IMG/VR virus record: IMGVR_UViG_3300020438_000007
Span: 166,740-230,739 of that record
Length of the DNA: 64,000 nucleotides
Strand: one strand, 5' to 3'
The notes under the pieces: model-generated
Databases searched by the model: none
Seen by the model: only the letters and a program-made list of their open reading frames with translations
Told to the model about the DNA's origin: nothing
Shown here: positions 27,257 through 63,290 of the stretch, piece after piece
Numbering within the stretch: the first letter of the stretch is position 1
How the letters are laid out: every line of letters begins with the position of its first letter
Position numbers and translations under genes: made by a program

Positions 27257-27437
27257 CTTTGTTCTTTTCTTCCACTAAATGTTCAACTTCTGAGGCAACC
27301 TTACCCATTACCTCTCTTACATCAGTTCCTGATCCAGAGGTATAATAGTAATCTGTTCCTTTCGGAGCATAATGTCTGGTGTGGAGTGTCCAATGCCACT
27401 GTTCAATATTTTTTGAATACCAGAATTGTAATCTCAT
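27249..27437 (-). CDS. hypothetical protein
   Basis: 62-aa ORF; TATAAAT late-type motif at 27448-27454. Confidence 0.65.
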   Translation of the reverse strand: MRLQFWYSKNIEQWHWTLHTRHYAPKGTDYYYTSGSGTDVREVMGKVASEVEHLVEEKNKDV

Positions 27438-27459
27438 GAGTGTTTTAATTTATATAGGA

Positions 27460-27750
27460 GGGGGCAGAGCCCCCACAGTCACTTGGTTAACAAGGAGTGA
27501 CTAATCCCCGATTGCCCCTTAAGCAGCGACGAGTTCGTCAGTGCGGGCAAATTCTCTTGTAAGAATACGAGAGAACGCTACGATGTTATTCGCAGCAGTG
27601 TCAGATGTTTTTGCATCTATGGTTTGCTCTCCGAGCAGGTTTTCAGTCATGTTCCGTATACCCTGTCGAGACCATGGCATCCCCTTGAATGGAGATGAGG
27701 GGAATCGAACCCCTGTCCAGAATGTCGATTACACCACCTACATGTCTTTT
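27460..27750 (-). ncRNA. ssrA: permuted two-piece tmRNA (cyanobacterial type), tag ANNIVAFSRILTREFARTDELVAA*
   Basis: Acceptor piece T-arm AGGGG-TTCGATT-CCCCT + CATCTCC-A (27690-27697); 5-nt spacer TTCAA; 5' strand GGGGATG (27684-27678) giving G3:U70; tag ORF 27593..27519; terminal hairpin GGGGGC-TCT-GCCCCC 27460-27474; 5' boundary approximate. Confidence 0.93.
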
Positions 27751-27767
27751 TGAGTCATACATCAGGA

Positions 27768-28355
27768 CTATACAATCCATTGTATCCAAGAATATCTGGT
27801 TCCTTTTGTTACTGGCATTACTTCATGTGGAAACAAATACAGTGCTGGAAATACTAACACACTTCCCTTCTTTATATTGACAGTGTGTTCCTTCCAAAAC
27901 CTAAACTCACCTCCTTCAAAATCGTCATTCAACACACCTACCACACTAGTAACAGGTATGCCTCTAAATTGTCCTTCAAAGAAATCTCGGATATGATCGT
28001 AGTGTGGACTAAGATAATCGCCAACATCATACTTATTGAATTTTATGCCTGAGCAAGCTTCCCAAAATGAACCGCCAGTTTGATTATCCTCAACGTCATA
28101 ATAATTATATTTTTCGTGGAAGGCATTAAACAACTCATCATTTATATGTGGTTGTATTATATTTACCGCCTCTGGGGCAGTTACGGTTGATTTCATATTT
28201 GATTCTTTATCAATATCAACCTGTTCAAAGTCCTGATACCAAGAAAATTCACCCCATTCACGAGAATCTAAAAGAGATACTATCTGATCACATTCCTGAT
28301 CAGATAGCAAATCATACTCAAATATGTGGTCTTTAAGATTCGGATACTTCAACAT
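27768..28355 (-). CDS. prolyl-4-hydroxylase-like 2OG-Fe(II) oxygenase
   Basis: KYDVGDYLSPHYD...LNDDFEGG...FPA.YLFPHEV.PVTKGTRYS. Confidence 0.9.
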   Translation of the reverse strand: MLKYPNLKDHIFEYDLLSDQECDQIVSLLDSREWGEFSWYQDFEQVDIDKESNMKSTVTAPEAVNIIQPHINDELFNAFHEKYNYYDVEDNQTGGSFWEACSGIKFNKYDVGDYLSPHYDHIRDFFEGQFRGIPVTSVVGVLNDDFEGGEFRFWKEHTVNIKKGSVLVFPALYLFPHEVMPVTKGTRYSWIQWIV

Positions 28356-58892: not shown

Positions 58893-59036
58893 TCAGCTCT
58901 TAGATGCGAACTTGCGTTCCACCTTGACACCACGATACATTAGATCGTGACGTTGCTTCTTAGCAGCTTCTTCGAGTACCTTTGCATTGTACTCGGCAGA
59001 GTCATAAGAGACTCCTCTGTATGTGACTTGTGCCAT
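58893..59036 (-). CDS. DUF4278-family peptide (47 aa)
   Basis: MAQVTYRGVSY...LMYRGVKV (repeated L.YRG motif); AGGAG SD at 59045-59049. Confidence 0.85.
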   Translation of the reverse strand: MAQVTYRGVSYDSAEYNAKVLEEAAKKQRHDLMYRGVKVERKFASKS

Positions 59037-59073
59037 CGGTTTTACTCCTGTAAGTAGTAGGGGGGTTTTAAAT

Positions 59074-59257
59074 CCCGTTCCTTCAGTCGTCATTTGCGTC
59101 CCAGCACCCAGGCGTTGACTCTTGCATAACAAGAATCAGTTCCGCCTTCTCGTTCTCACTTAACGTGTTGTTCCTAAGTATTCGATCAGTAATGTCGAAT
59201 GCTTGAGAACACTCAAGTGAAGTATAGAGTAACAAGAGAGGTATCATGGGATGAACG
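59074..59257 (-). promoter_or_regulatory. glutamine-II (Downstream-peptide) riboswitch copy 2, with a ~150-nt ORF-bearing insertion in P2
   Basis: CGTTCATCCCA...TGGGACGCAAATGACGACTGAAGGAACGGG upstream of DUF4278. Confidence 0.75.
59083..59247 (-). CDS. 54-aa ORF nested in the riboswitch (MIPLLLLYTSLECSQ...STPGCWDANDD)
   Basis: Manually translated, 55 codons, no internal stop; two Cys; hydrophobic N-terminus. Confidence 0.65.
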   Translation of the reverse strand: MIPLLLLYTSLECSQAFDITDRILRNNTLSENEKAELILVMQESTPGCWDANDD

Positions 59258-59259
59258 AT

Positions 59260-59321
59260 CCGTTCCGTGTCGGCTTACTTGCGTCCCCTCATTCTGCCAA
59301 AGGCAACTTGGGGGATGAACG
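59260..59321 (-). promoter_or_regulatory. glutamine-II (Downstream-peptide) riboswitch copy 1
   Basis: CGTTCATCCCC...GGGGACGCAAGTAAGCCGACACGGAACGG. Confidence 0.75.
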
Positions 59322-59330
59322 TGTGTGTTA

Positions 59331-59359
59331 ATTATAACACAATGCAATTATTTATGCAA
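59331..59359 (-). promoter_or_regulatory. sigma70 promoter TTGCAT-17-TATAAT with an overlapping late TAAATA
   Basis: Hexamers 59354-59359 and 59331-59336; TAAATA 59349-59354. Confidence 0.8.
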
Positions 59360-59395: not shown

Positions 59396-60931
59396 TTATG
59401 AAGATTTAACATTGTCACCTAGTACTAGAGTGTCTAGACCAGTCTCATAAAATAGTTCCAAGGCATCCCCAAACCTTCCAGCTATGGGTTTACCACCATT
59501 ATTTAGGGAAGTATTGAGCAAGACAGGTGATCCAGTCAACTTCTCAAACTCCTGTAGTAGACTGTAATAATCTTCTTGAGATTCATTTACTGTGTTGATT
59601 CTACATGTACCATCTACATGTGTGATTGTAGGATATCTGTCTGGTTCTAACACATCAGTCACATATAACATGTATGGACTGGGACCATTCCAGTAGAAAT
59701 TTTCACTTACCTTCTCTTCTAAAACAGAGGCACCGAATGGTCTGAATGGTTCTCTATGTTTAACCTTATTATTAATAAAGTCTTTCCCATGAGGATCAAA
59801 AGGATTCATAAGTATACTTCTATTACCTAATGCTCTAGGACCTATCTCACCATGTCCTTGATACCAACCAACAATCTCACCCTTGGCGAGTCTTTCTGCG
59901 GTCTCCTTGATAGTTTTGGTAGAAGGTCTATCAATAGGAGCCTGATCATCTTGCATAAAGGGGAATCCTTCTGTGGGGAGTGGCATCATATTGTGTTCCC
60001 TTCTTAGAAACTCTATTGCACCAAGACTCAATCCCTGATCGTATGCGTGTGGTGGTATAACAAGATTAGGTATGGCATCTTTCAATACCTTATTAATAAT
60101 AGTATTCTGTGCCACACCACCAGAGTACCCAACAATATCATCTGGTTTAACAAACTCTAGAAAATGTTTTAGATATATCTGTTCTGTATATTCATGTGCT
60201 GTATGAATATAATCCATGATGTATTGTTGATCGTGAAGATTATGATCTATTACATCAAAATTCCATAGTTTTTCTAGATCATCTATACCAATACCCTTAG
60301 CAGATATATCTGGATCATGTTTACCAAACGCTTTCAGAGCCATGATCTTCCCTGCCTGATCTAGGTAATGACCACCCATCTGTAAGGCAGCACCCATCCT
60401 AGTCATAATGAATCCAAGACTAGGAGAACCCTGTTGACTTGGAAATATACCTACTGTCTTGCCATGATCTATAAGTTTATCATCTCTCCATACACTACGA
60501 TACATCCAATCATCACCGAATCCATCAAAGACGAAGTGAAGATTGGGTTTGACCTTCATAGGCCAGAAACTTAATGTATGTGCATAGTGATGATCTATCC
60601 TGTGAATAGGGCATCTAAATCCTAAGTCTTTGAAAAAAGGTATATCTACTACTTCTGATATCTCTTGGGAATTTATAGAGAAGGATGTATGTACGACACC
60701 CATCCTTTCATATTCAGTTCCAGCACAGTCCATGATGATGCAGACACCATCAATAAACCAAGGTTGGATATTCCAATCCTCAAGTATTCTTGTCCATTGA
60801 TATACTCCGTTCTCAAAACCTACATGCTTACATTGATAGTCTCTTTCAAAAGATCTATATCTGACAGTCTCTCCGTCATAGTAAGTTACGTTTGCGTCAT
60901 GAGAGTCTAGTCTTAGACCTAATAATTTCAT
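59396..60931 (-). CDS. carbamoyltransferase (NodU/CmcH/TobZ family)
   Basis: HD.N, DHHYAH, DG.GD, GK.MAL, SGGVAQN, EIGPRALGNRSIL, REPFRPF, HVDGT.R, LLNTSLN. Confidence 0.95.
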   Translation of the reverse strand: MKLLGLRLDSHDANVTYYDGETVRYRSFERDYQCKHVGFENGVYQWTRILEDWNIQPWFIDGVCIIMDCAGTEYERMGVVHTSFSINSQEISEVVDIPFFKDLGFRCPIHRIDHHYAHTLSFWPMKVKPNLHFVFDGFGDDWMYRSVWRDDKLIDHGKTVGIFPSQQGSPSLGFIMTRMGAALQMGGHYLDQAGKIMALKAFGKHDPDISAKGIGIDDLEKLWNFDVIDHNLHDQQYIMDYIHTAHEYTEQIYLKHFLEFVKPDDIVGYSGGVAQNTIINKVLKDAIPNLVIPPHAYDQGLSLGAIEFLRREHNMMPLPTEGFPFMQDDQAPIDRPSTKTIKETAERLAKGEIVGWYQGHGEIGPRALGNRSILMNPFDPHGKDFINNKVKHREPFRPFGASVLEEKVSENFYWNGPSPYMLYVTDVLEPDRYPTITHVDGTCRINTVNESQEDYYSLLQEFEKLTGSPVLLNTSLNNGGKPIAGRFGDALELFYETGLDTLVLGDNVKSS

Positions 60932-61000
60932 GCTGACCCTACGGTTCAAATTTTTATCCGAGTTTTTTTCCCAGCTTTTTGTGTTTTAAAAGCTGATTTT
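60932..61000 (-). repeat. intergenic structured element, copy B
   Basis: AAAATCAGCTTTT-loop-AAAAGCTGG-A7-CTCGG...AGGGTCAGC-ATG. Confidence 0.7.
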
Positions 61001-62977: not shown

Positions 62978-63061
62978 TGGGAGAAGAGGGACTCGAACCC
63001 TCACGACATTTCTGCCAACAGATTTTAAGTCTGGTGTGTCTACCGATTCCACCACACTCCC
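62978..63061 (-). tRNA. tRNA-Leu(UAA)
   Basis: Cloverleaf with long variable arm, loop CT-TAA-AA, GGTTCGAGTCC; CCA not encoded. Confidence 0.93.
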
Positions 63062-63064
63062 GAA

Positions 63065-63138
63065 CGACTCAAGTAGGACTCGAACCTACGACCGACTGCT
63101 TAGAAGGCAGTTGCTCTATCCATCTGAGCTATTGAGTC
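63065..63138 (-). tRNA. tRNA-Arg(UCU)
   Basis: ACTGC-CT-TCT-AA-GCAGT anticodon arm; 7-bp acceptor stem. Confidence 0.95.
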
Positions 63139-63141
63139 TGG

Positions 63142-63215
63142 AGCCACTTGTCGGACTTGAACCGACGACCTACGCATTACAAATGCGTTGCTCTATCCAG
63201 CTGAGCTAAAGTGGC
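63142..63215 (-). tRNA. tRNA-Thr(UGU)
   Basis: ACGCA-TT-TGT-AA-TGCGT anticodon arm; U73. Confidence 0.95.
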
Positions 63216-63218
63216 GAA

Positions 63219-63290
63219 TAGGACTACCGAGAATTGAACTCGGTTCACACCGTTATAAGCAGTGGGCATTAACCAATATGCGATAGTCCC
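63219..63290 (-). tRNA. tRNA-Ile(UAU)
   Basis: CACTG-CT-TAT-AA-CGGTG anticodon arm; A73; T-loop GTTCAAT. Confidence 0.88.

What the first reader, a model, noticed from the sequence alone, without database searches (positions are those of the whole stretch)
59083..59247. A complete protein-coding gene nested inside a riboswitch aptamer
Seen: the P2 loop of riboswitch 2 is expanded to ~150 nt and holds a 54-aa ORF. Its AUG overlaps the 5' strand of P2 (CCCAUG), the 3' strand and conserved core are read as W-D-A-N-D-D (UGG GAC GCA AAU GAC GAC), and its UGA stop lies in the conserved GACUGAAGGAACG. It has no SD of its own, and the start lies 13 nt after riboswitch 1. Inference: aptamer folding and translation of the nested ORF are mutually exclusive. 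Riboswitch 1 could gate the nested peptide, whose translation in turn disables riboswitch 2 and sets DUF4278 output: a two-peptide, translation-coupled glutamine logic circuit. The peptide (hydrophobic N-terminus, two Cys) may be an effector itself. I am not aware of this architecture having been described.
Basis: partly seen in the sequence, partly recalled or inferred. Interest (0 to 1): 0.85.

Follow-up and report, generated by a model that had tools for sequence, protein, structure and literature searches.

The report
Small gene inside glutamine riboswitch
In this cyanophage, and in hundreds of its relatives, a real 50-66 amino-acid protein gene sits inside a stem-loop of a glutamine-sensing RNA switch, with its start and stop codons built into the sensor's own conserved strands, so the same RNA must alternate between being a sensor and being a message.

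Summary
On the minus strand, a 54-codon ORF (59247..59083) fills a 153-nt stem-loop of a glutamine (glnA-type) aptamer, upstream of a DUF4278 gene.

The ORF is a real gene:
- It belongs to phrog_504 and is found in 276 cyanophage records.
- It is intact in 139 of 139 insert-bearing viral loci.
- Insert lengths are almost all multiples of three, and dN/dS is about 0.32 only in this frame.
- Synonymous sites are frozen where it overlaps the aptamer core.
- The helix that closes it covaries across the insert.

The "tandem riboswitch" reading is not supported. Covariation and the Rfam model indicate one complete outer aptamer: P1 joins the first 5' strand to the last 3' strand, and an E-loop plus P3 forms between the two junction strands. 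This outer aptamer encloses an inner, permuted aptamer-like module, whose P2 carries the ORF.

A homologous ORF sits in the outer P2 in about a quarter of the loci. This argues against "riboswitch 1 gates the peptide".

The ORF's stop codon lies in a switch sequence, CU[G/A]AAG, that covaries with a partner overlapping the DUF4278 Shine-Dalgarno.

Inferred mechanism: folding with glutamine hides the nested AUG and frees the downstream SD, while translation of the nested ORF unfolds the sensor. No description of this architecture was found in the literature searched. Interest is high.

The parts
59331..59359 (-). Promoter-like site: TTGCAT (59359-59354), 17-nt spacer, TGT-TATAAT (59339-59331). 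It would start the transcript a few nt before the aptamer.
   Evidence: Read from the sequence. The consensus scan did not list it because the -35 hexamer matches only 3 of 6. A TATAAT at the same distance from the first CGUUC is seen in most related loci.
59317..59321 (-). a1: 5' strand of the outer P1 (CGUUC). Its proposed partner is a'2 at 59080-59076.
   Evidence: In relatives the fifth base changes C to U only together with G to A in a'2 (10 loci). The Rfam model pairs these two strands in compact relatives.
59284..59315 (-). Outer P2 hairpin (UCCCC...GGGGA) with a 22-nt loop. In about a quarter of related loci this loop holds a 65-75 aa ORF.
59266..59283 (-). J1: CGC, then AAGUA (E-loop strand, 59280-59276), then AGCCGACA (P3 5' strand, 59275-59268), then CG.
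   Evidence: J1 and J2 covary in length (short with short, long with long). The pair J1 position 8 with J2 position 4 switches from A:U to U:A.
59253..59265 (-). Inner hairpin: a'1 GAACG (59265-59261), loop GAU, a2 CGUUC (59257-59253). This is the P1-like helix of the inner, permuted aptamer-like module.
   Evidence: GAACG/CGUUC in 154 loci, CAACG/CGUUG in 124, and no single-sided change. The hairpin is also predicted in the minimum-energy fold of the compact P-TIM68 relative.
59099..59251 (-). Inner P2 arm, 153 nt. It is closed by UCCCA (59251-59247) pairing with UGGGA (59103-59099) and carries the nested ORF.
   Evidence: closing pairs 1-4 are paired in 99-100% of 139 loci. Pair 4 is C-G in 106, U-A in 22 and U-G in 9. 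In the minimum-energy fold the closing pairs form in all 50 native arms tested, against 86% of codon-permuted controls. The arm interior folds much more stably than codon-permuted controls (window z = -4.2).
59083..59247 (-). Nested protein gene, 54 aa, phrog_504. Predicted two-helix hairpin between two invariant Cys (C13, C48). The C-terminus WDANDD is dictated by the aptamer core.
59081..59098 (-). J2: CGCAAA, then UGACGACU (P3 3' strand, 59092-59085), then GAAG (E-loop strand, 59084-59081). The switch sequence CUGAAG (59086-59081) contains the ORF's UGA stop (59085-59083).
59076..59080 (-). a'2: 3' strand of the outer P1 (GAACG).
59045..59054 (-). Expression platform: CUUACAG (59054-59048) is complementary to the switch CUGAAG, with one bulged A. 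It overlaps the Shine-Dalgarno AGGAG (59049-59045) of the downstream gene.
   Evidence: The helix appears in the minimum-energy fold. Across 196 distinct relatives the central pair is A:U in 61, G:C in 70, G:U in 55 and A:C in 0 (Fisher p = 1e-16, not corrected for relatedness).
58893..59036 (-). Downstream regulated gene: 47-aa DUF4278 protein (IF17-like).
   Evidence: Pfam PF14105, 28.7 bits against a cut-off of 25.3; phrog_5049, E = 2.4e-23. Glutamine aptamers are linked to DUF4278 genes in cyanobacteria (PMC6212724).
58831..58862 (-). Intrinsic terminator ending the small transcription unit.
   Evidence: 10-bp stem followed by a U run.

Best explanation
The locus is a self-contained early-type cassette of a T4-like cyanophage: promoter, glutamine sensor, DUF4278 gene, terminator. 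Steps are marked as shown, supported or inferred.

The sensor (supported by covariation and by the Rfam model):
- It is not two riboswitches in a row. It is one complete type-I glutamine aptamer.
- Its P1 is 59321-17 paired with 59080-76.
- Its P2 is 59315-59284.
- Its E-loop is AAGUA with GAAG, and its P3 forms between the two junction strands.
- The P3 arm ends in a second, circularly permuted aptamer-like module. The P1-like helix of that module is the local hairpin 59265-59253.
- The 153-nt P2 arm of that module carries a real 54-aa gene.

The nested gene (shown by comparative sequence evidence):
- The ORF is under purifying selection as a protein.
- Its AUG sits in the 5' strand of P2.
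- Its last five codons and stop are read from the P2 3' strand, the conserved core, the P3 3' strand and the E-loop.

The switch (supported by covariation):
- The stop codon lies in CU[G/A]AAG. This sequence can pair either inside the aptamer or with CUU[C/U]AG, which overlaps the Shine-Dalgarno of the DUF4278 gene.

The regulation (inferred):
- With glutamine the aptamer folds. The switch sequence is held in P3 and the E-loop, the DUF4278 ribosome-binding site is free (ON, as shown for gifB in Synechocystis), and the nested AUG is buried in P2 (OFF).
- Without glutamine, or on nascent RNA before the 3' partner strands are made, the nested AUG is accessible and the DUF4278 site is masked.
- A ribosome reading the nested ORF unwinds the whole sensor. 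It stops on the switch sequence, 47 nt before the DUF4278 start, and so transiently unmasks that start.

The peptide is a small helical hairpin bracketed by two invariant cysteines. Its target is unknown.
For: Coding:
- Intact in 139/139 loci with 134 distinct sequences, and none open in another frame.
- Insert lengths are almost all multiples of three.
- Third-position entropy is about 1.5 against about 0.7 at second positions.
- Pairwise dN/dS is 0.32 in frame, against 0.79 and 2.1 in the shifted frames.
- The peptide matches phrog_504 at E = 2.4e-17. It is found in 276 cyanophage records and in 341 clusters of small proteins among 1.84 billion representatives.
- AlphaFold gives a confident two-helix hairpin.

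RNA constraint on the same bases:
- Third positions of the last five codons have entropy 0.14-0.54.
- The P2 closing pairs covary across the insert.

Nested topology:
- The P1 position-5 classes are C/G/C/G in 134 loci, C/C/G/G in 94 and U/C/G/A in 10. All fit the outer and inner pairing, and the last two break both cis helices.
- J1:J2 pairing shows A:U to U:A and G-C to G-U changes, and the two strands covary in length.
- The Rfam RF01739 model aligns five of six compact relatives as one aptamer spanning both units, at 35.6-43.6 bits against a gathering score of 35. In the sixth (P-TIM68) the above-threshold match (35.4 bits) covers only the second unit.

Expression platform:
- The switch/anti-SD pair covaries with no A:C case, and the helix is present in the window's minimum-energy fold.

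Generality:
- A homologous ORF (hhalign 90%, E = 1.8e-6) sits in the outer P2 in 39 loci. Its stop codon UAA/UGA/UAG covaries with the 5' strand UCUUA/UCUCA/UCC.A.

Sign of regulation:
- The glutamine aptamer before gifB (DUF4278) switches translation on, by a proposed release of the ribosome-binding site (PMC6212724).
Against: - There is no experimental evidence here for glutamine binding, for translation of the ORF, or for either switch state.
- The window's own aptamer does not reach Rfam's gathering score (25.2 bits for the first unit). The nested reading of the window cannot be scored because of the 153-nt insert.
- The two decisive P1 covariations may each be a single evolutionary event. 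The U/C/G/A class is one close clade.
- The window itself belongs to the ambiguous C/G/C/G class.
- The inner module also scores as a Glutamine-II-like unit in some compact relatives (34 bits against 33), and in P-TIM68 the second unit alone reaches the type-I threshold (35.4 bits). An alternative cis fold is therefore not excluded, and both folds may be used as the two states of the switch.
- In the minimum-energy fold of the arm, part of the AUG is paired whatever the ligand. De novo initiation may therefore be poor in every state.
- Ribosome termination on the switch sequence could make DUF4278 expression partly independent of glutamine.
Confidence: 0.6

Rival explanations
1. Two independent glutamine riboswitches stand in tandem. 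Riboswitch 1 gates translation of the nested peptide, and that translation in turn disables riboswitch 2 and sets DUF4278 output.
For: - Each unit holds the core shared by both glutamine riboswitch classes: CGUUCA, a UCCC/GGGA hairpin, CGCA and GAACG.
- The second unit of compact relatives scores 31-34 bits as Glutamine-II, and in P-TIM68 it alone reaches the type-I threshold (35.4 bits).
- The literature treats such doublets as independent, pseudo-cooperative riboswitches (PMC9481103).
- The AUG lies 13 nt after unit 1.
Against: - 104 fully parsed loci (124 counting partial ones) carry changes that break both cis P1 innermost pairs but keep the crossed pairs.
- Unit 1 lacks the GAAG strand of the E-loop and unit 2 lacks the AGUA strand. 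The two are complementary to each other.
- Rfam's model prefers the single nested aptamer in five of six compact relatives.
- Homologous ORFs sit in the first P2 loop with nothing upstream to gate them.
Confidence: 0.15
2. Kinetic 'one-shot' variant. The nested ORF is translated only from nascent RNA, in the roughly 150-nt window before the 3' strand of P2 is transcribed. Once the first ribosome has passed, the RNA folds for good and serves only as a glutamine switch for DUF4278. Glutamine does not regulate the nested ORF.
For: - The partner strand of the AUG lies 150 nt downstream.
- The arm is very stable once complete: -55 kcal/mol in the window, with P2 closing pairs in the minimum-energy fold of all 50 native arms tested.
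- Insert interiors are more structured than codon-permuted controls (mean z = -2.85).
- There is no conserved Shine-Dalgarno.
- From my own knowledge, start sites open only on nascent RNA are known for the maturation gene of RNA phage MS2.
Against: - This is purely inferential.
- It does not explain why the stop codon is kept inside the switch sequence in 132 of 139 loci.
Confidence: 0.2
3. The insert is mainly an RNA element, a long extension of P2 or a former mobile insertion. The open frame would then be incidental, or the aptamer around it a dead relic.
For: - The insert is strongly structured.
- One small internal hairpin shows compensatory third-position changes.
- The P2 and P3 loops of glnA RNAs tolerate long insertions in the original 2010 alignment.
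Against: - dN/dS is 0.32 only in the ORF frame.
- The codon-position entropy pattern is that of a coding sequence.
- The two Cys are invariant and the helical hairpin is confidently predicted.
- All 134 variants are open in this frame only.
- No conserved global RNA fold of the insert was found.
- Both aptamer halves are conserved to the nucleotide and covary, so the aptamer is not a relic.
Confidence: 0.04

Closest known systems
Type-I glutamine riboswitch (glnA RNA, Rfam RF01739) before gifB/DUF4278 genes of cyanobacteria (PMC6212724; PMC2864571)
   Same: - Same conserved strands: CGUUC / GAACG for P1, the UCCC/GGGA hairpin, the CGCA core and the AAGUA/GAAG E-loop.
- Same kind of downstream gene (DUF4278).
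- Same proposed logic: the 3' part of the aptamer masks the ribosome-binding site unless glutamine is bound.
   Different: - Here the P3 arm carries a second, permuted aptamer-like module.
- The P2 loop or loops carry conserved 50-75 aa protein genes whose start and stop codons are part of the aptamer.
- The window's RNA does not reach Rfam's threshold as it stands.
Tandem ('doublet') glutamine riboswitches, described as pseudo-cooperative independent units (PMC9481103; PMC2864571)
   Same: Two aptamer-like units stand head to tail before one gene. These are probably the same objects when they lack inserts.
   Different: - Covariation here supports crossed (nested) pairing of the four P1 strands and a helix between the two junction strands. 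The units are therefore interlocked, not independent.
- None of the papers read mentions an ORF inside.
Leader ORFs inside sensing leaders: mgtL in the Mg2+-sensing mgtA leader of Salmonella (own knowledge), and uORFs coupled to atypical B12 riboswitches in Mycobacterium tuberculosis (PMC11260477)
   Same: A short ORF lies inside a ligand-sensing 5' leader. Its translation competes with alternative RNA structures and influences the downstream gene.
   Different: - Those ORFs lie in the expression platform or in loosely defined sensing stems, and they act through ribosome position.
- Here the ORF lies inside a helix-loop of the ligand-binding aptamer itself.
- Here it encodes a conserved, folded protein family under purifying selection, and it borrows its last codons from the binding core.
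ORFs housed in loops of structured RNAs: homing-endonuclease genes in group I intron loops, the intron-encoded protein in domain IV of group II introns, and dual-function sRNAs such as SgrS/SgrT and RNAIII/hld (own knowledge)
   Same: A protein gene is tolerated in a peripheral loop of a functional RNA fold, so the RNA is both structure and message.
   Different: - The host RNA here is a small metabolite aptamer, not a ribozyme or a base-pairing sRNA.
- The coding sequence overlaps the catalytic-core equivalent (the ligand-binding core) rather than being confined to the loop.

Membership tests
Glutamine riboswitch type I (glnA RNA, RF01739) | P1 helix CGUUC / GAACG closing the aptamer | tested here: met
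   Both strands are present (59321-17 and 59080-76). The crossed partner assignment is supported by C-G to U-A covariation in relatives and by the Rfam alignment of compact relatives.
Glutamine riboswitch type I (glnA RNA, RF01739) | P2 hairpin (UCCC/GGGA) followed by the ACG(G/C) core | tested here: met
   P2 pairs covary in 112 compact and 139 insert-bearing examples.
Glutamine riboswitch type I (glnA RNA, RF01739) | E-loop strands AAGUA and GAAG flanking a P3 element | tested here: met
   Met only in the nested reading: AAGUA at 59280-76 and GAAG at 59084-81, with P3 between AGCCGACA and UGACGACU (6 of 8 Watson-Crick pairs).
Glutamine riboswitch type I (glnA RNA, RF01739) | Score at or above Rfam's gathering threshold (35 bits) | tested here: inconclusive
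   In the window the first unit alone scores 25.2 bits, and nothing passes at the gathering threshold. The 153-nt insert prevents scoring of the full nested aptamer. Compact relatives score 35.4-43.6 bits, five of six as one aptamer spanning both units.
Glutamine riboswitch type I (glnA RNA, RF01739) | Selective binding of L-glutamine | not testable with these tools
   Needs in-line probing or ITC.
Glutamine riboswitch type I (glnA RNA, RF01739) | Position in the 5' leader of a nitrogen-related or DUF4278 gene | tested here: met
   A DUF4278 gene lies 40 nt downstream of the outer P1. All parsed relatives have a YRG-repeat (DUF4278-like) gene there.
Glutamine-II riboswitch (Downstream-peptide, RF01704) | Score at or above the gathering threshold (33 bits), with the 3' hairpin enclosing GGAACG | tested here: not met
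   The window scores 25.1 bits. In compact relatives the second unit reaches 28.8-34 bits, but the 3' hairpin columns are mismatched.
Independent tandem (pseudo-cooperative) riboswitches | Each unit closes its own P1 and folds on its own | tested here: not met
   104 fully parsed loci (124 counting partial ones) carry C.C and G.G (or U.C and G.A) at the innermost cis P1 pairs, but Watson-Crick pairs in the crossed arrangement. The J1:J2 helix links the two units.
phrog_504 (cyanophage small protein of unknown function) | Significant match to the family profile over its full length | tested here: met
   E = 2.4e-17, residues 5-53 against profile positions 4-53 of 53.
DUF4278 (PF14105), for the downstream gene | Score above Pfam's gathering threshold | tested here: met
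   28.7 bits against 25.3.
Leader-peptide or uORF-controlled leaders (mgtL type) | Short ORF whose translation, not its product, is the signal, so the peptide sequence is not conserved beyond key codons | tested here: not met
   The peptide is conserved as a protein: dN/dS is 0.32, two Cys are invariant and a fold is predicted.

The most novel reading that the evidence does not exclude
One RNA serves as a glutamine sensor and as the message for a protein lodged inside the sensor, and it gives opposite outputs. When host glutamine is low the sensor stays open and the nested cysteine-bracketed peptide is made. When glutamine is high the sensor closes on the nested start codon and instead releases the ribosome-binding site of the IF17-like DUF4278 protein. 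Each ribosome that reads the nested gene erases the sensor and forces a fresh reading of glutamine. The sensor itself would be a new 'aptamer within an aptamer' fold with two possible ligand sites.
Probability: 0.3. Interest if true: 0.92.

Novelty: new variant of a known kind. Interest (0 to 1): 0.85.

Why it matters
Riboswitch aptamers are treated as non-coding, and phages are said to use them rarely. A 2017 survey found only two glutamine aptamers in cyanophage genomes (PMC5473149).

This result changes that picture in several ways:
- A glutamine sensor is widespread in T4-like cyanophages but escapes the standard model, because protein genes sit inside it.
- It is a natural case in which a ligand-binding core and a coding sequence share the same nucleotides under double selection.
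- It suggests a compact way to obtain reciprocal control of two proteins from one sensor.
- It indicates that the common 'tandem' glutamine riboswitches may really be interlocked double aptamers. That would alter how their dose-response behaviour is interpreted.
- It gives two unknown phage protein families (phrog_504/13397 and phrog_6471) a firm link to the host's nitrogen status, beside the IF17-like DUF4278 proteins. This makes their function directly testable.

Tried and rejected
- Pfam gives nothing for the peptide.
- The word-indexed protein search found no candidate.
- Foldseek against the PDB gave no match with E below 1, as expected for a generic helical hairpin.
- One giant 5238-aa protein among the HMM hits matches only through 21 weak repeats of about 5 bits or less each. 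I judged it spurious.
- A lipoprotein or signal peptide for the window's family: by inspection the Cys is at position 12-13, there is an acidic residue at position 3 and no basic N-region. This does not fit the usual rules (own knowledge), so I rejected it for this family. Some sister families (MKFLLPLLLL..., MLSILLALTLAHH...) do look signal-like. This was not tested.
- RNAalifold on a codon-aware alignment of 105 inserts found no conserved global fold, only small hairpins.
- 'Rod-likeness' of the arm does not differ from codon-permuted controls.
- Minimum-energy folding of a compact relative does not decide between topologies.
- The exact junction pattern in 185,579 species genomes gave five hits, none a convincing cellular copy. 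Four are contigs of metagenome-assembled genomes. The fifth, filed under Nonlabens, is 98% identical to phage P-TIM40.
- A Shine-Dalgarno in the linker: GGAG occurs in about 65% of loci. It is absent in the window and would lie in the inner hairpin, so I rejected it as a conserved feature.
- Ames and Breaker 2011, the paper that validated the aptamer, could not be read. A mention of inserts there cannot be excluded.
Full report
**What the window is**

The region lies on the minus strand of a T4-like cyanomyovirus. The closest record is Synechococcus phage S-SSM7, at 78.5% identity over the locus. 162 cyanophage records match the locus at the DNA level. The window has a G+C content of 36-40%. 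It also holds a carbamoyltransferase gene, four tRNAs and a tmRNA.

**Check of the observation**

Reading 59400 to 58860 on the minus strand gives the following elements in order:
- a TTGCAT-17-TGTTATAAT promoter-like site;
- CGUUC-A-UCCCC...GGGGA-CGCAAGUAAGCCGACACG-GAACG;
- the three bases GAU;
- CGUUC-A-UCCCAUG, followed by 140 nt;
- CUGGGA-CGCAAAUGACGACUGAAG-GAACG;
- a short spacer, AGGAG, and a 47-aa DUF4278 gene (Pfam 28.7 bits against 25.3);
- a terminator.

The 54-aa ORF 59247..59083 is listed mechanically. Rfam finds the first unit only below threshold: RF01739 at 25.2 against 35 bits, RF01704 at 25.1 against 33 bits. At the gathering threshold it finds nothing.

**The ORF is a gene**

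- It matches phrog_504 (E = 2.4e-17) and has no Pfam family.
- tblastn finds it in 276 phage records, all cyanophages.
- In S-SSM7, ACG-2014b, S-SSM4 and P-TIM40 an annotated hypothetical gene occupies the same place. It begins CGUUCAUCC[C/U]AUG and ends in GACU[G/A]AAGGAACG. P-TIM68 has the same two units without any insert. Four further genera repeat the layout.
- A scan of viral contigs for the junction pattern, and a second scan anchored only on the 3' core, each stopped at the 120-locus limit.
- Among the loci found by the 3' anchor alone, roughly six in seven carry an insert of 147-230 nt.
- All 139 insert-bearing loci have an intact ATG-ORF of 50-66 aa. They represent 134 distinct nucleotide sequences, and none is open in either other frame.
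- Insert lengths are almost all multiples of three.
- In a codon alignment of 105 sequences, third-position entropy (about 1.5 bits) exceeds second-position entropy (about 0.7) throughout the interior.
- Pairwise dN/dS is 0.32 in frame, against 0.79 and 2.1 in the shifted frames.
- Two cysteines are invariant. AlphaFold predicts two helices (residues 13-25 and 31-44) between them, with pLDDT 89-95. No significant structural neighbour was found.
- A profile search of 1.84 billion representative proteins finds 341 clusters, essentially all 50-80 aa. The longer ones are gene calls that read backwards through the RNA core.
- The 64-aa variants (phrog_13397) are homologous to the 54-aa family (hhalign 91%, E = 1e-6).

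**The RNA around and under the ORF is also selected**

- The last five codons (W-D-A-N-D) have third-position entropies of 0.14-0.54, so synonymous change is suppressed where the ORF overlaps the aptamer core.
- The helix that closes the 150-nt arm is paired in 99-100% of loci at pairs 1-4. Pair 4 is C-G in 106 loci, U-A in 22 and U-G in 9, so the two strands covary across the whole gene.
- Insert interiors fold more stably than codon-permuted versions: mean z is -2.85, and the window's is -4.2. No conserved global fold emerges.

**The 'tandem' is better read as one nested double aptamer**

Call the four P1-type strands a1, a'1, a2 and a'2, in order along the RNA. Three lines of evidence bear on their pairing.

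1. Two further scans together with the earlier loci give 286 parsed sites. The fifth P1 position falls into three classes:
   - C/G/C/G in 134 loci;
   - C/C/G/G in 94 loci, plus partial ones;
   - U/C/G/A in 10 loci.

   The last two classes give mismatches in both cis helices. They give Watson-Crick pairs for a1:a'2 and for a'1:a2. No single-sided change was seen: GAACG/CGUUC occurs 154 times, CAACG/CGUUG 124 times, and mixed combinations never. The U/C/G/A class is one close clade. There are therefore at least two independent compensatory events, not many.
2. The two junction strands are complementary. J1 is AAGUA-AGUCG-CG and J2 is AAA-CGACU-GAAG, which gives an AGUA/GAA E-loop followed by five pairs. 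The longer forms (as in the window) go together. They keep six of eight pairs and switch one pair from A:U to U:A. G-C to G-U changes also occur.
3. On five of six compact relatives, Rfam's own covariance model aligns both units as one RF01739 aptamer at 35.6-43.6 bits, above the gathering score of 35. In that alignment P1 is a1:a'2, and the second unit is a 38-41-nt insertion in the P3 loop. In the sixth relative (P-TIM68) the above-threshold match (35.4 bits) covers only the second unit.

Unit 1 alone lacks GAAG and unit 2 alone lacks AGUA. This explains the sub-threshold score in the window.

The inner module (a'1:a2 hairpin, P2 with the ORF, CGCAA) keeps the core shared by both glutamine riboswitch classes and may bind a second ligand. 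That cannot be tested here. A cis fold of unit 2 resembling Glutamine-II scores 28.8-34 bits in compact relatives, but with mismatched hairpin columns. It remains a possible alternative state.

The literature I could read treats these doublets as independent, pseudo-cooperative riboswitches (PMC9481103; PMC2864571). The original 2010 alignment has very wide gap columns in the P2 and P3 loops but no annotation about ORFs.

**A second nested gene in relatives**

In 39 of 261 parsed loci the outer P2 loop also holds an ORF of 65-75 aa (phrog_6471). Its AUG lies in the same position relative to a1, a few nucleotides from the promoter's predicted start.

Its stop codon overlaps the 3' strand of P2 and covaries with the 5' strand:
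- UCUUA with UAA, 8 of 8;
- UCUCA with UGA, 8 of 8;
- UCC.A with UAG, 13 of 13.

This family is homologous to the window's family from Cys to Cys (hhalign 90%, E = 1.8e-6). Hosting an ORF is therefore a property of these P2 loops, not of a position behind 'riboswitch 1'.

**Expression platform**

The sequence CU[G/A]AAG comprises the end of the P3 3' strand and the E-loop, and it contains the nested ORF's stop codon. It is complementary to CUU[C/U]AG, which overlaps the AGGAG of the DUF4278 gene.

In 196 distinct relatives the central pair is A:U in 61, G:C in 70, G:U in 55, and never A:C. Fisher's p is 1e-16, which ignores relatedness. In the window the helix (CUGAAG with CUU-A-CAG) appears in the minimum-energy fold, although its energy is unremarkable.

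This matches the model proposed for gifB. There, nucleotides at the 3' edge of the aptamer mask the ribosome-binding site until glutamine binding withdraws them, and the switch is ON with glutamine (PMC6212724).

**Mechanism (inference)**

- When the aptamer is folded, the nested AUG is in P2 and the downstream Shine-Dalgarno is free.
- When it is unfolded or still nascent, the nested AUG is open and the Shine-Dalgarno is masked.
- A ribosome on the nested ORF must unwind P2, the core, P3 and the E-loop. At the stop codon it also covers the outer P1 3' strand.
- The ribosome ends 47 nt before the DUF4278 start, on the masking sequence, which should transiently unmask that start.

Whether glutamine truly regulates the nested ORF is open. 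The alternative is that the ORF is translated only from nascent RNA. The arm is very stable, and its closing pairs form in every native minimum-energy fold.

**Distribution and novelty**

The exact junction pattern occurs in five contigs of 185,579 species genomes, none a convincing cellular copy. Four are contigs of metagenome-assembled genomes. The fifth, filed under Nonlabens, is 98% identical to phage P-TIM40.

Full-text searches found no description of an ORF inside a glutamine aptamer or of the nested topology. A 2017 survey reported only two glutamine aptamers in cyanophage genomes (PMC5473149). The paper that first validated the aptamer could not be read.

The nearest concepts are leader ORFs in sensing leaders (mgtL, from my own knowledge; B12 uORFs, PMC11260477) and ORFs in loops of introns. 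None of these places a conserved protein gene inside a metabolite-binding aptamer with shared nucleotides.

I rate this a new variant of a known kind, of high interest, with the mechanism still to be shown.

Noticed in passing
window 27428-27779 (-): The phage window carries a two-piece (permuted) cyanobacterial-type tmRNA gene. Rfam RF01851 scores 109 bits, and ARAGORN gives the tag peptide AKTSDTAANNIVAFSRILTREFARTDELVAA.
   Followed up: partly
window 62978-63290 (-): A cluster of four tRNA genes separated by 3-nt spacers or directly abutting: Leu-UAA, Arg-UCU, Thr-UGU and Ile-UAU.
   Followed up: no
window 59396-60949 (-): A 517-aa carbamoyltransferase (Pfam Carbam_trans_C, phrog_1601) lies directly upstream of the riboswitch cassette. 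In S-SSM7 the same neighbours occur, with pstS downstream, whereas in most other phages the cassette sits between nrdB and talC.
   Followed up: partly
L010, L014, L151, L306 and 35 other loci (outer P2 loop): A second nested gene family (phrog_6471, 65-75 aa, MLSILLALTLAHH..PYGWHMSCERF...KVEGQC) sits in the first P2 loop. Its stop codon is paired with the 5' strand of P2. It is homologous to the window's peptide family.
   Followed up: yes
L159:about 5390 (-): One locus has a single aptamer whose 325-nt insert looks like a fusion of the outer-loop ORF and an inner-loop ORF. This would arise if the segment between the two units had been deleted.
   Followed up: no
codon-alignment columns 109-131 of the family (VETVKEST region); in the window about 59135-59113 (-), estimated from codon positions: A small hairpin inside the coding region (GUUGA...UCAAC) has one pair made of two third-codon positions. 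It switches from U-A (46 sequences) to A-U (28), a hint of RNA-level selection inside the ORF.
   Followed up: partly
L176-L180 (genome contigs): Cyanophage sequence is filed under cellular names. A 188-kb contig of a Nonlabens xiamenensis assembly is 98% identical to phage P-TIM40. Other hits are contigs of Euryarchaeota and Synechococcus MAGs.
   Followed up: partly
P0002, P0015, P0024 and similar proteins: Public gene calls often extend the nested ORF upstream through the first unit (…DASKSRNGAVHPM…). This translates the RNA core as protein.
   Followed up: yes
L129:1021-1116 (+): A PhotoRC-II RNA (57 bits) lies on the same viral contig as a compact glutamine doublet.
   Followed up: no
L181, L185 and eight close relatives (tail after the outer P1): In the U/C/G/A clade an extra hairpin (AACGGAUCCUG....CAGAGAAGGUU) is inserted between the aptamer and the anti-SD sequence. 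Its role is unknown.
   Followed up: no
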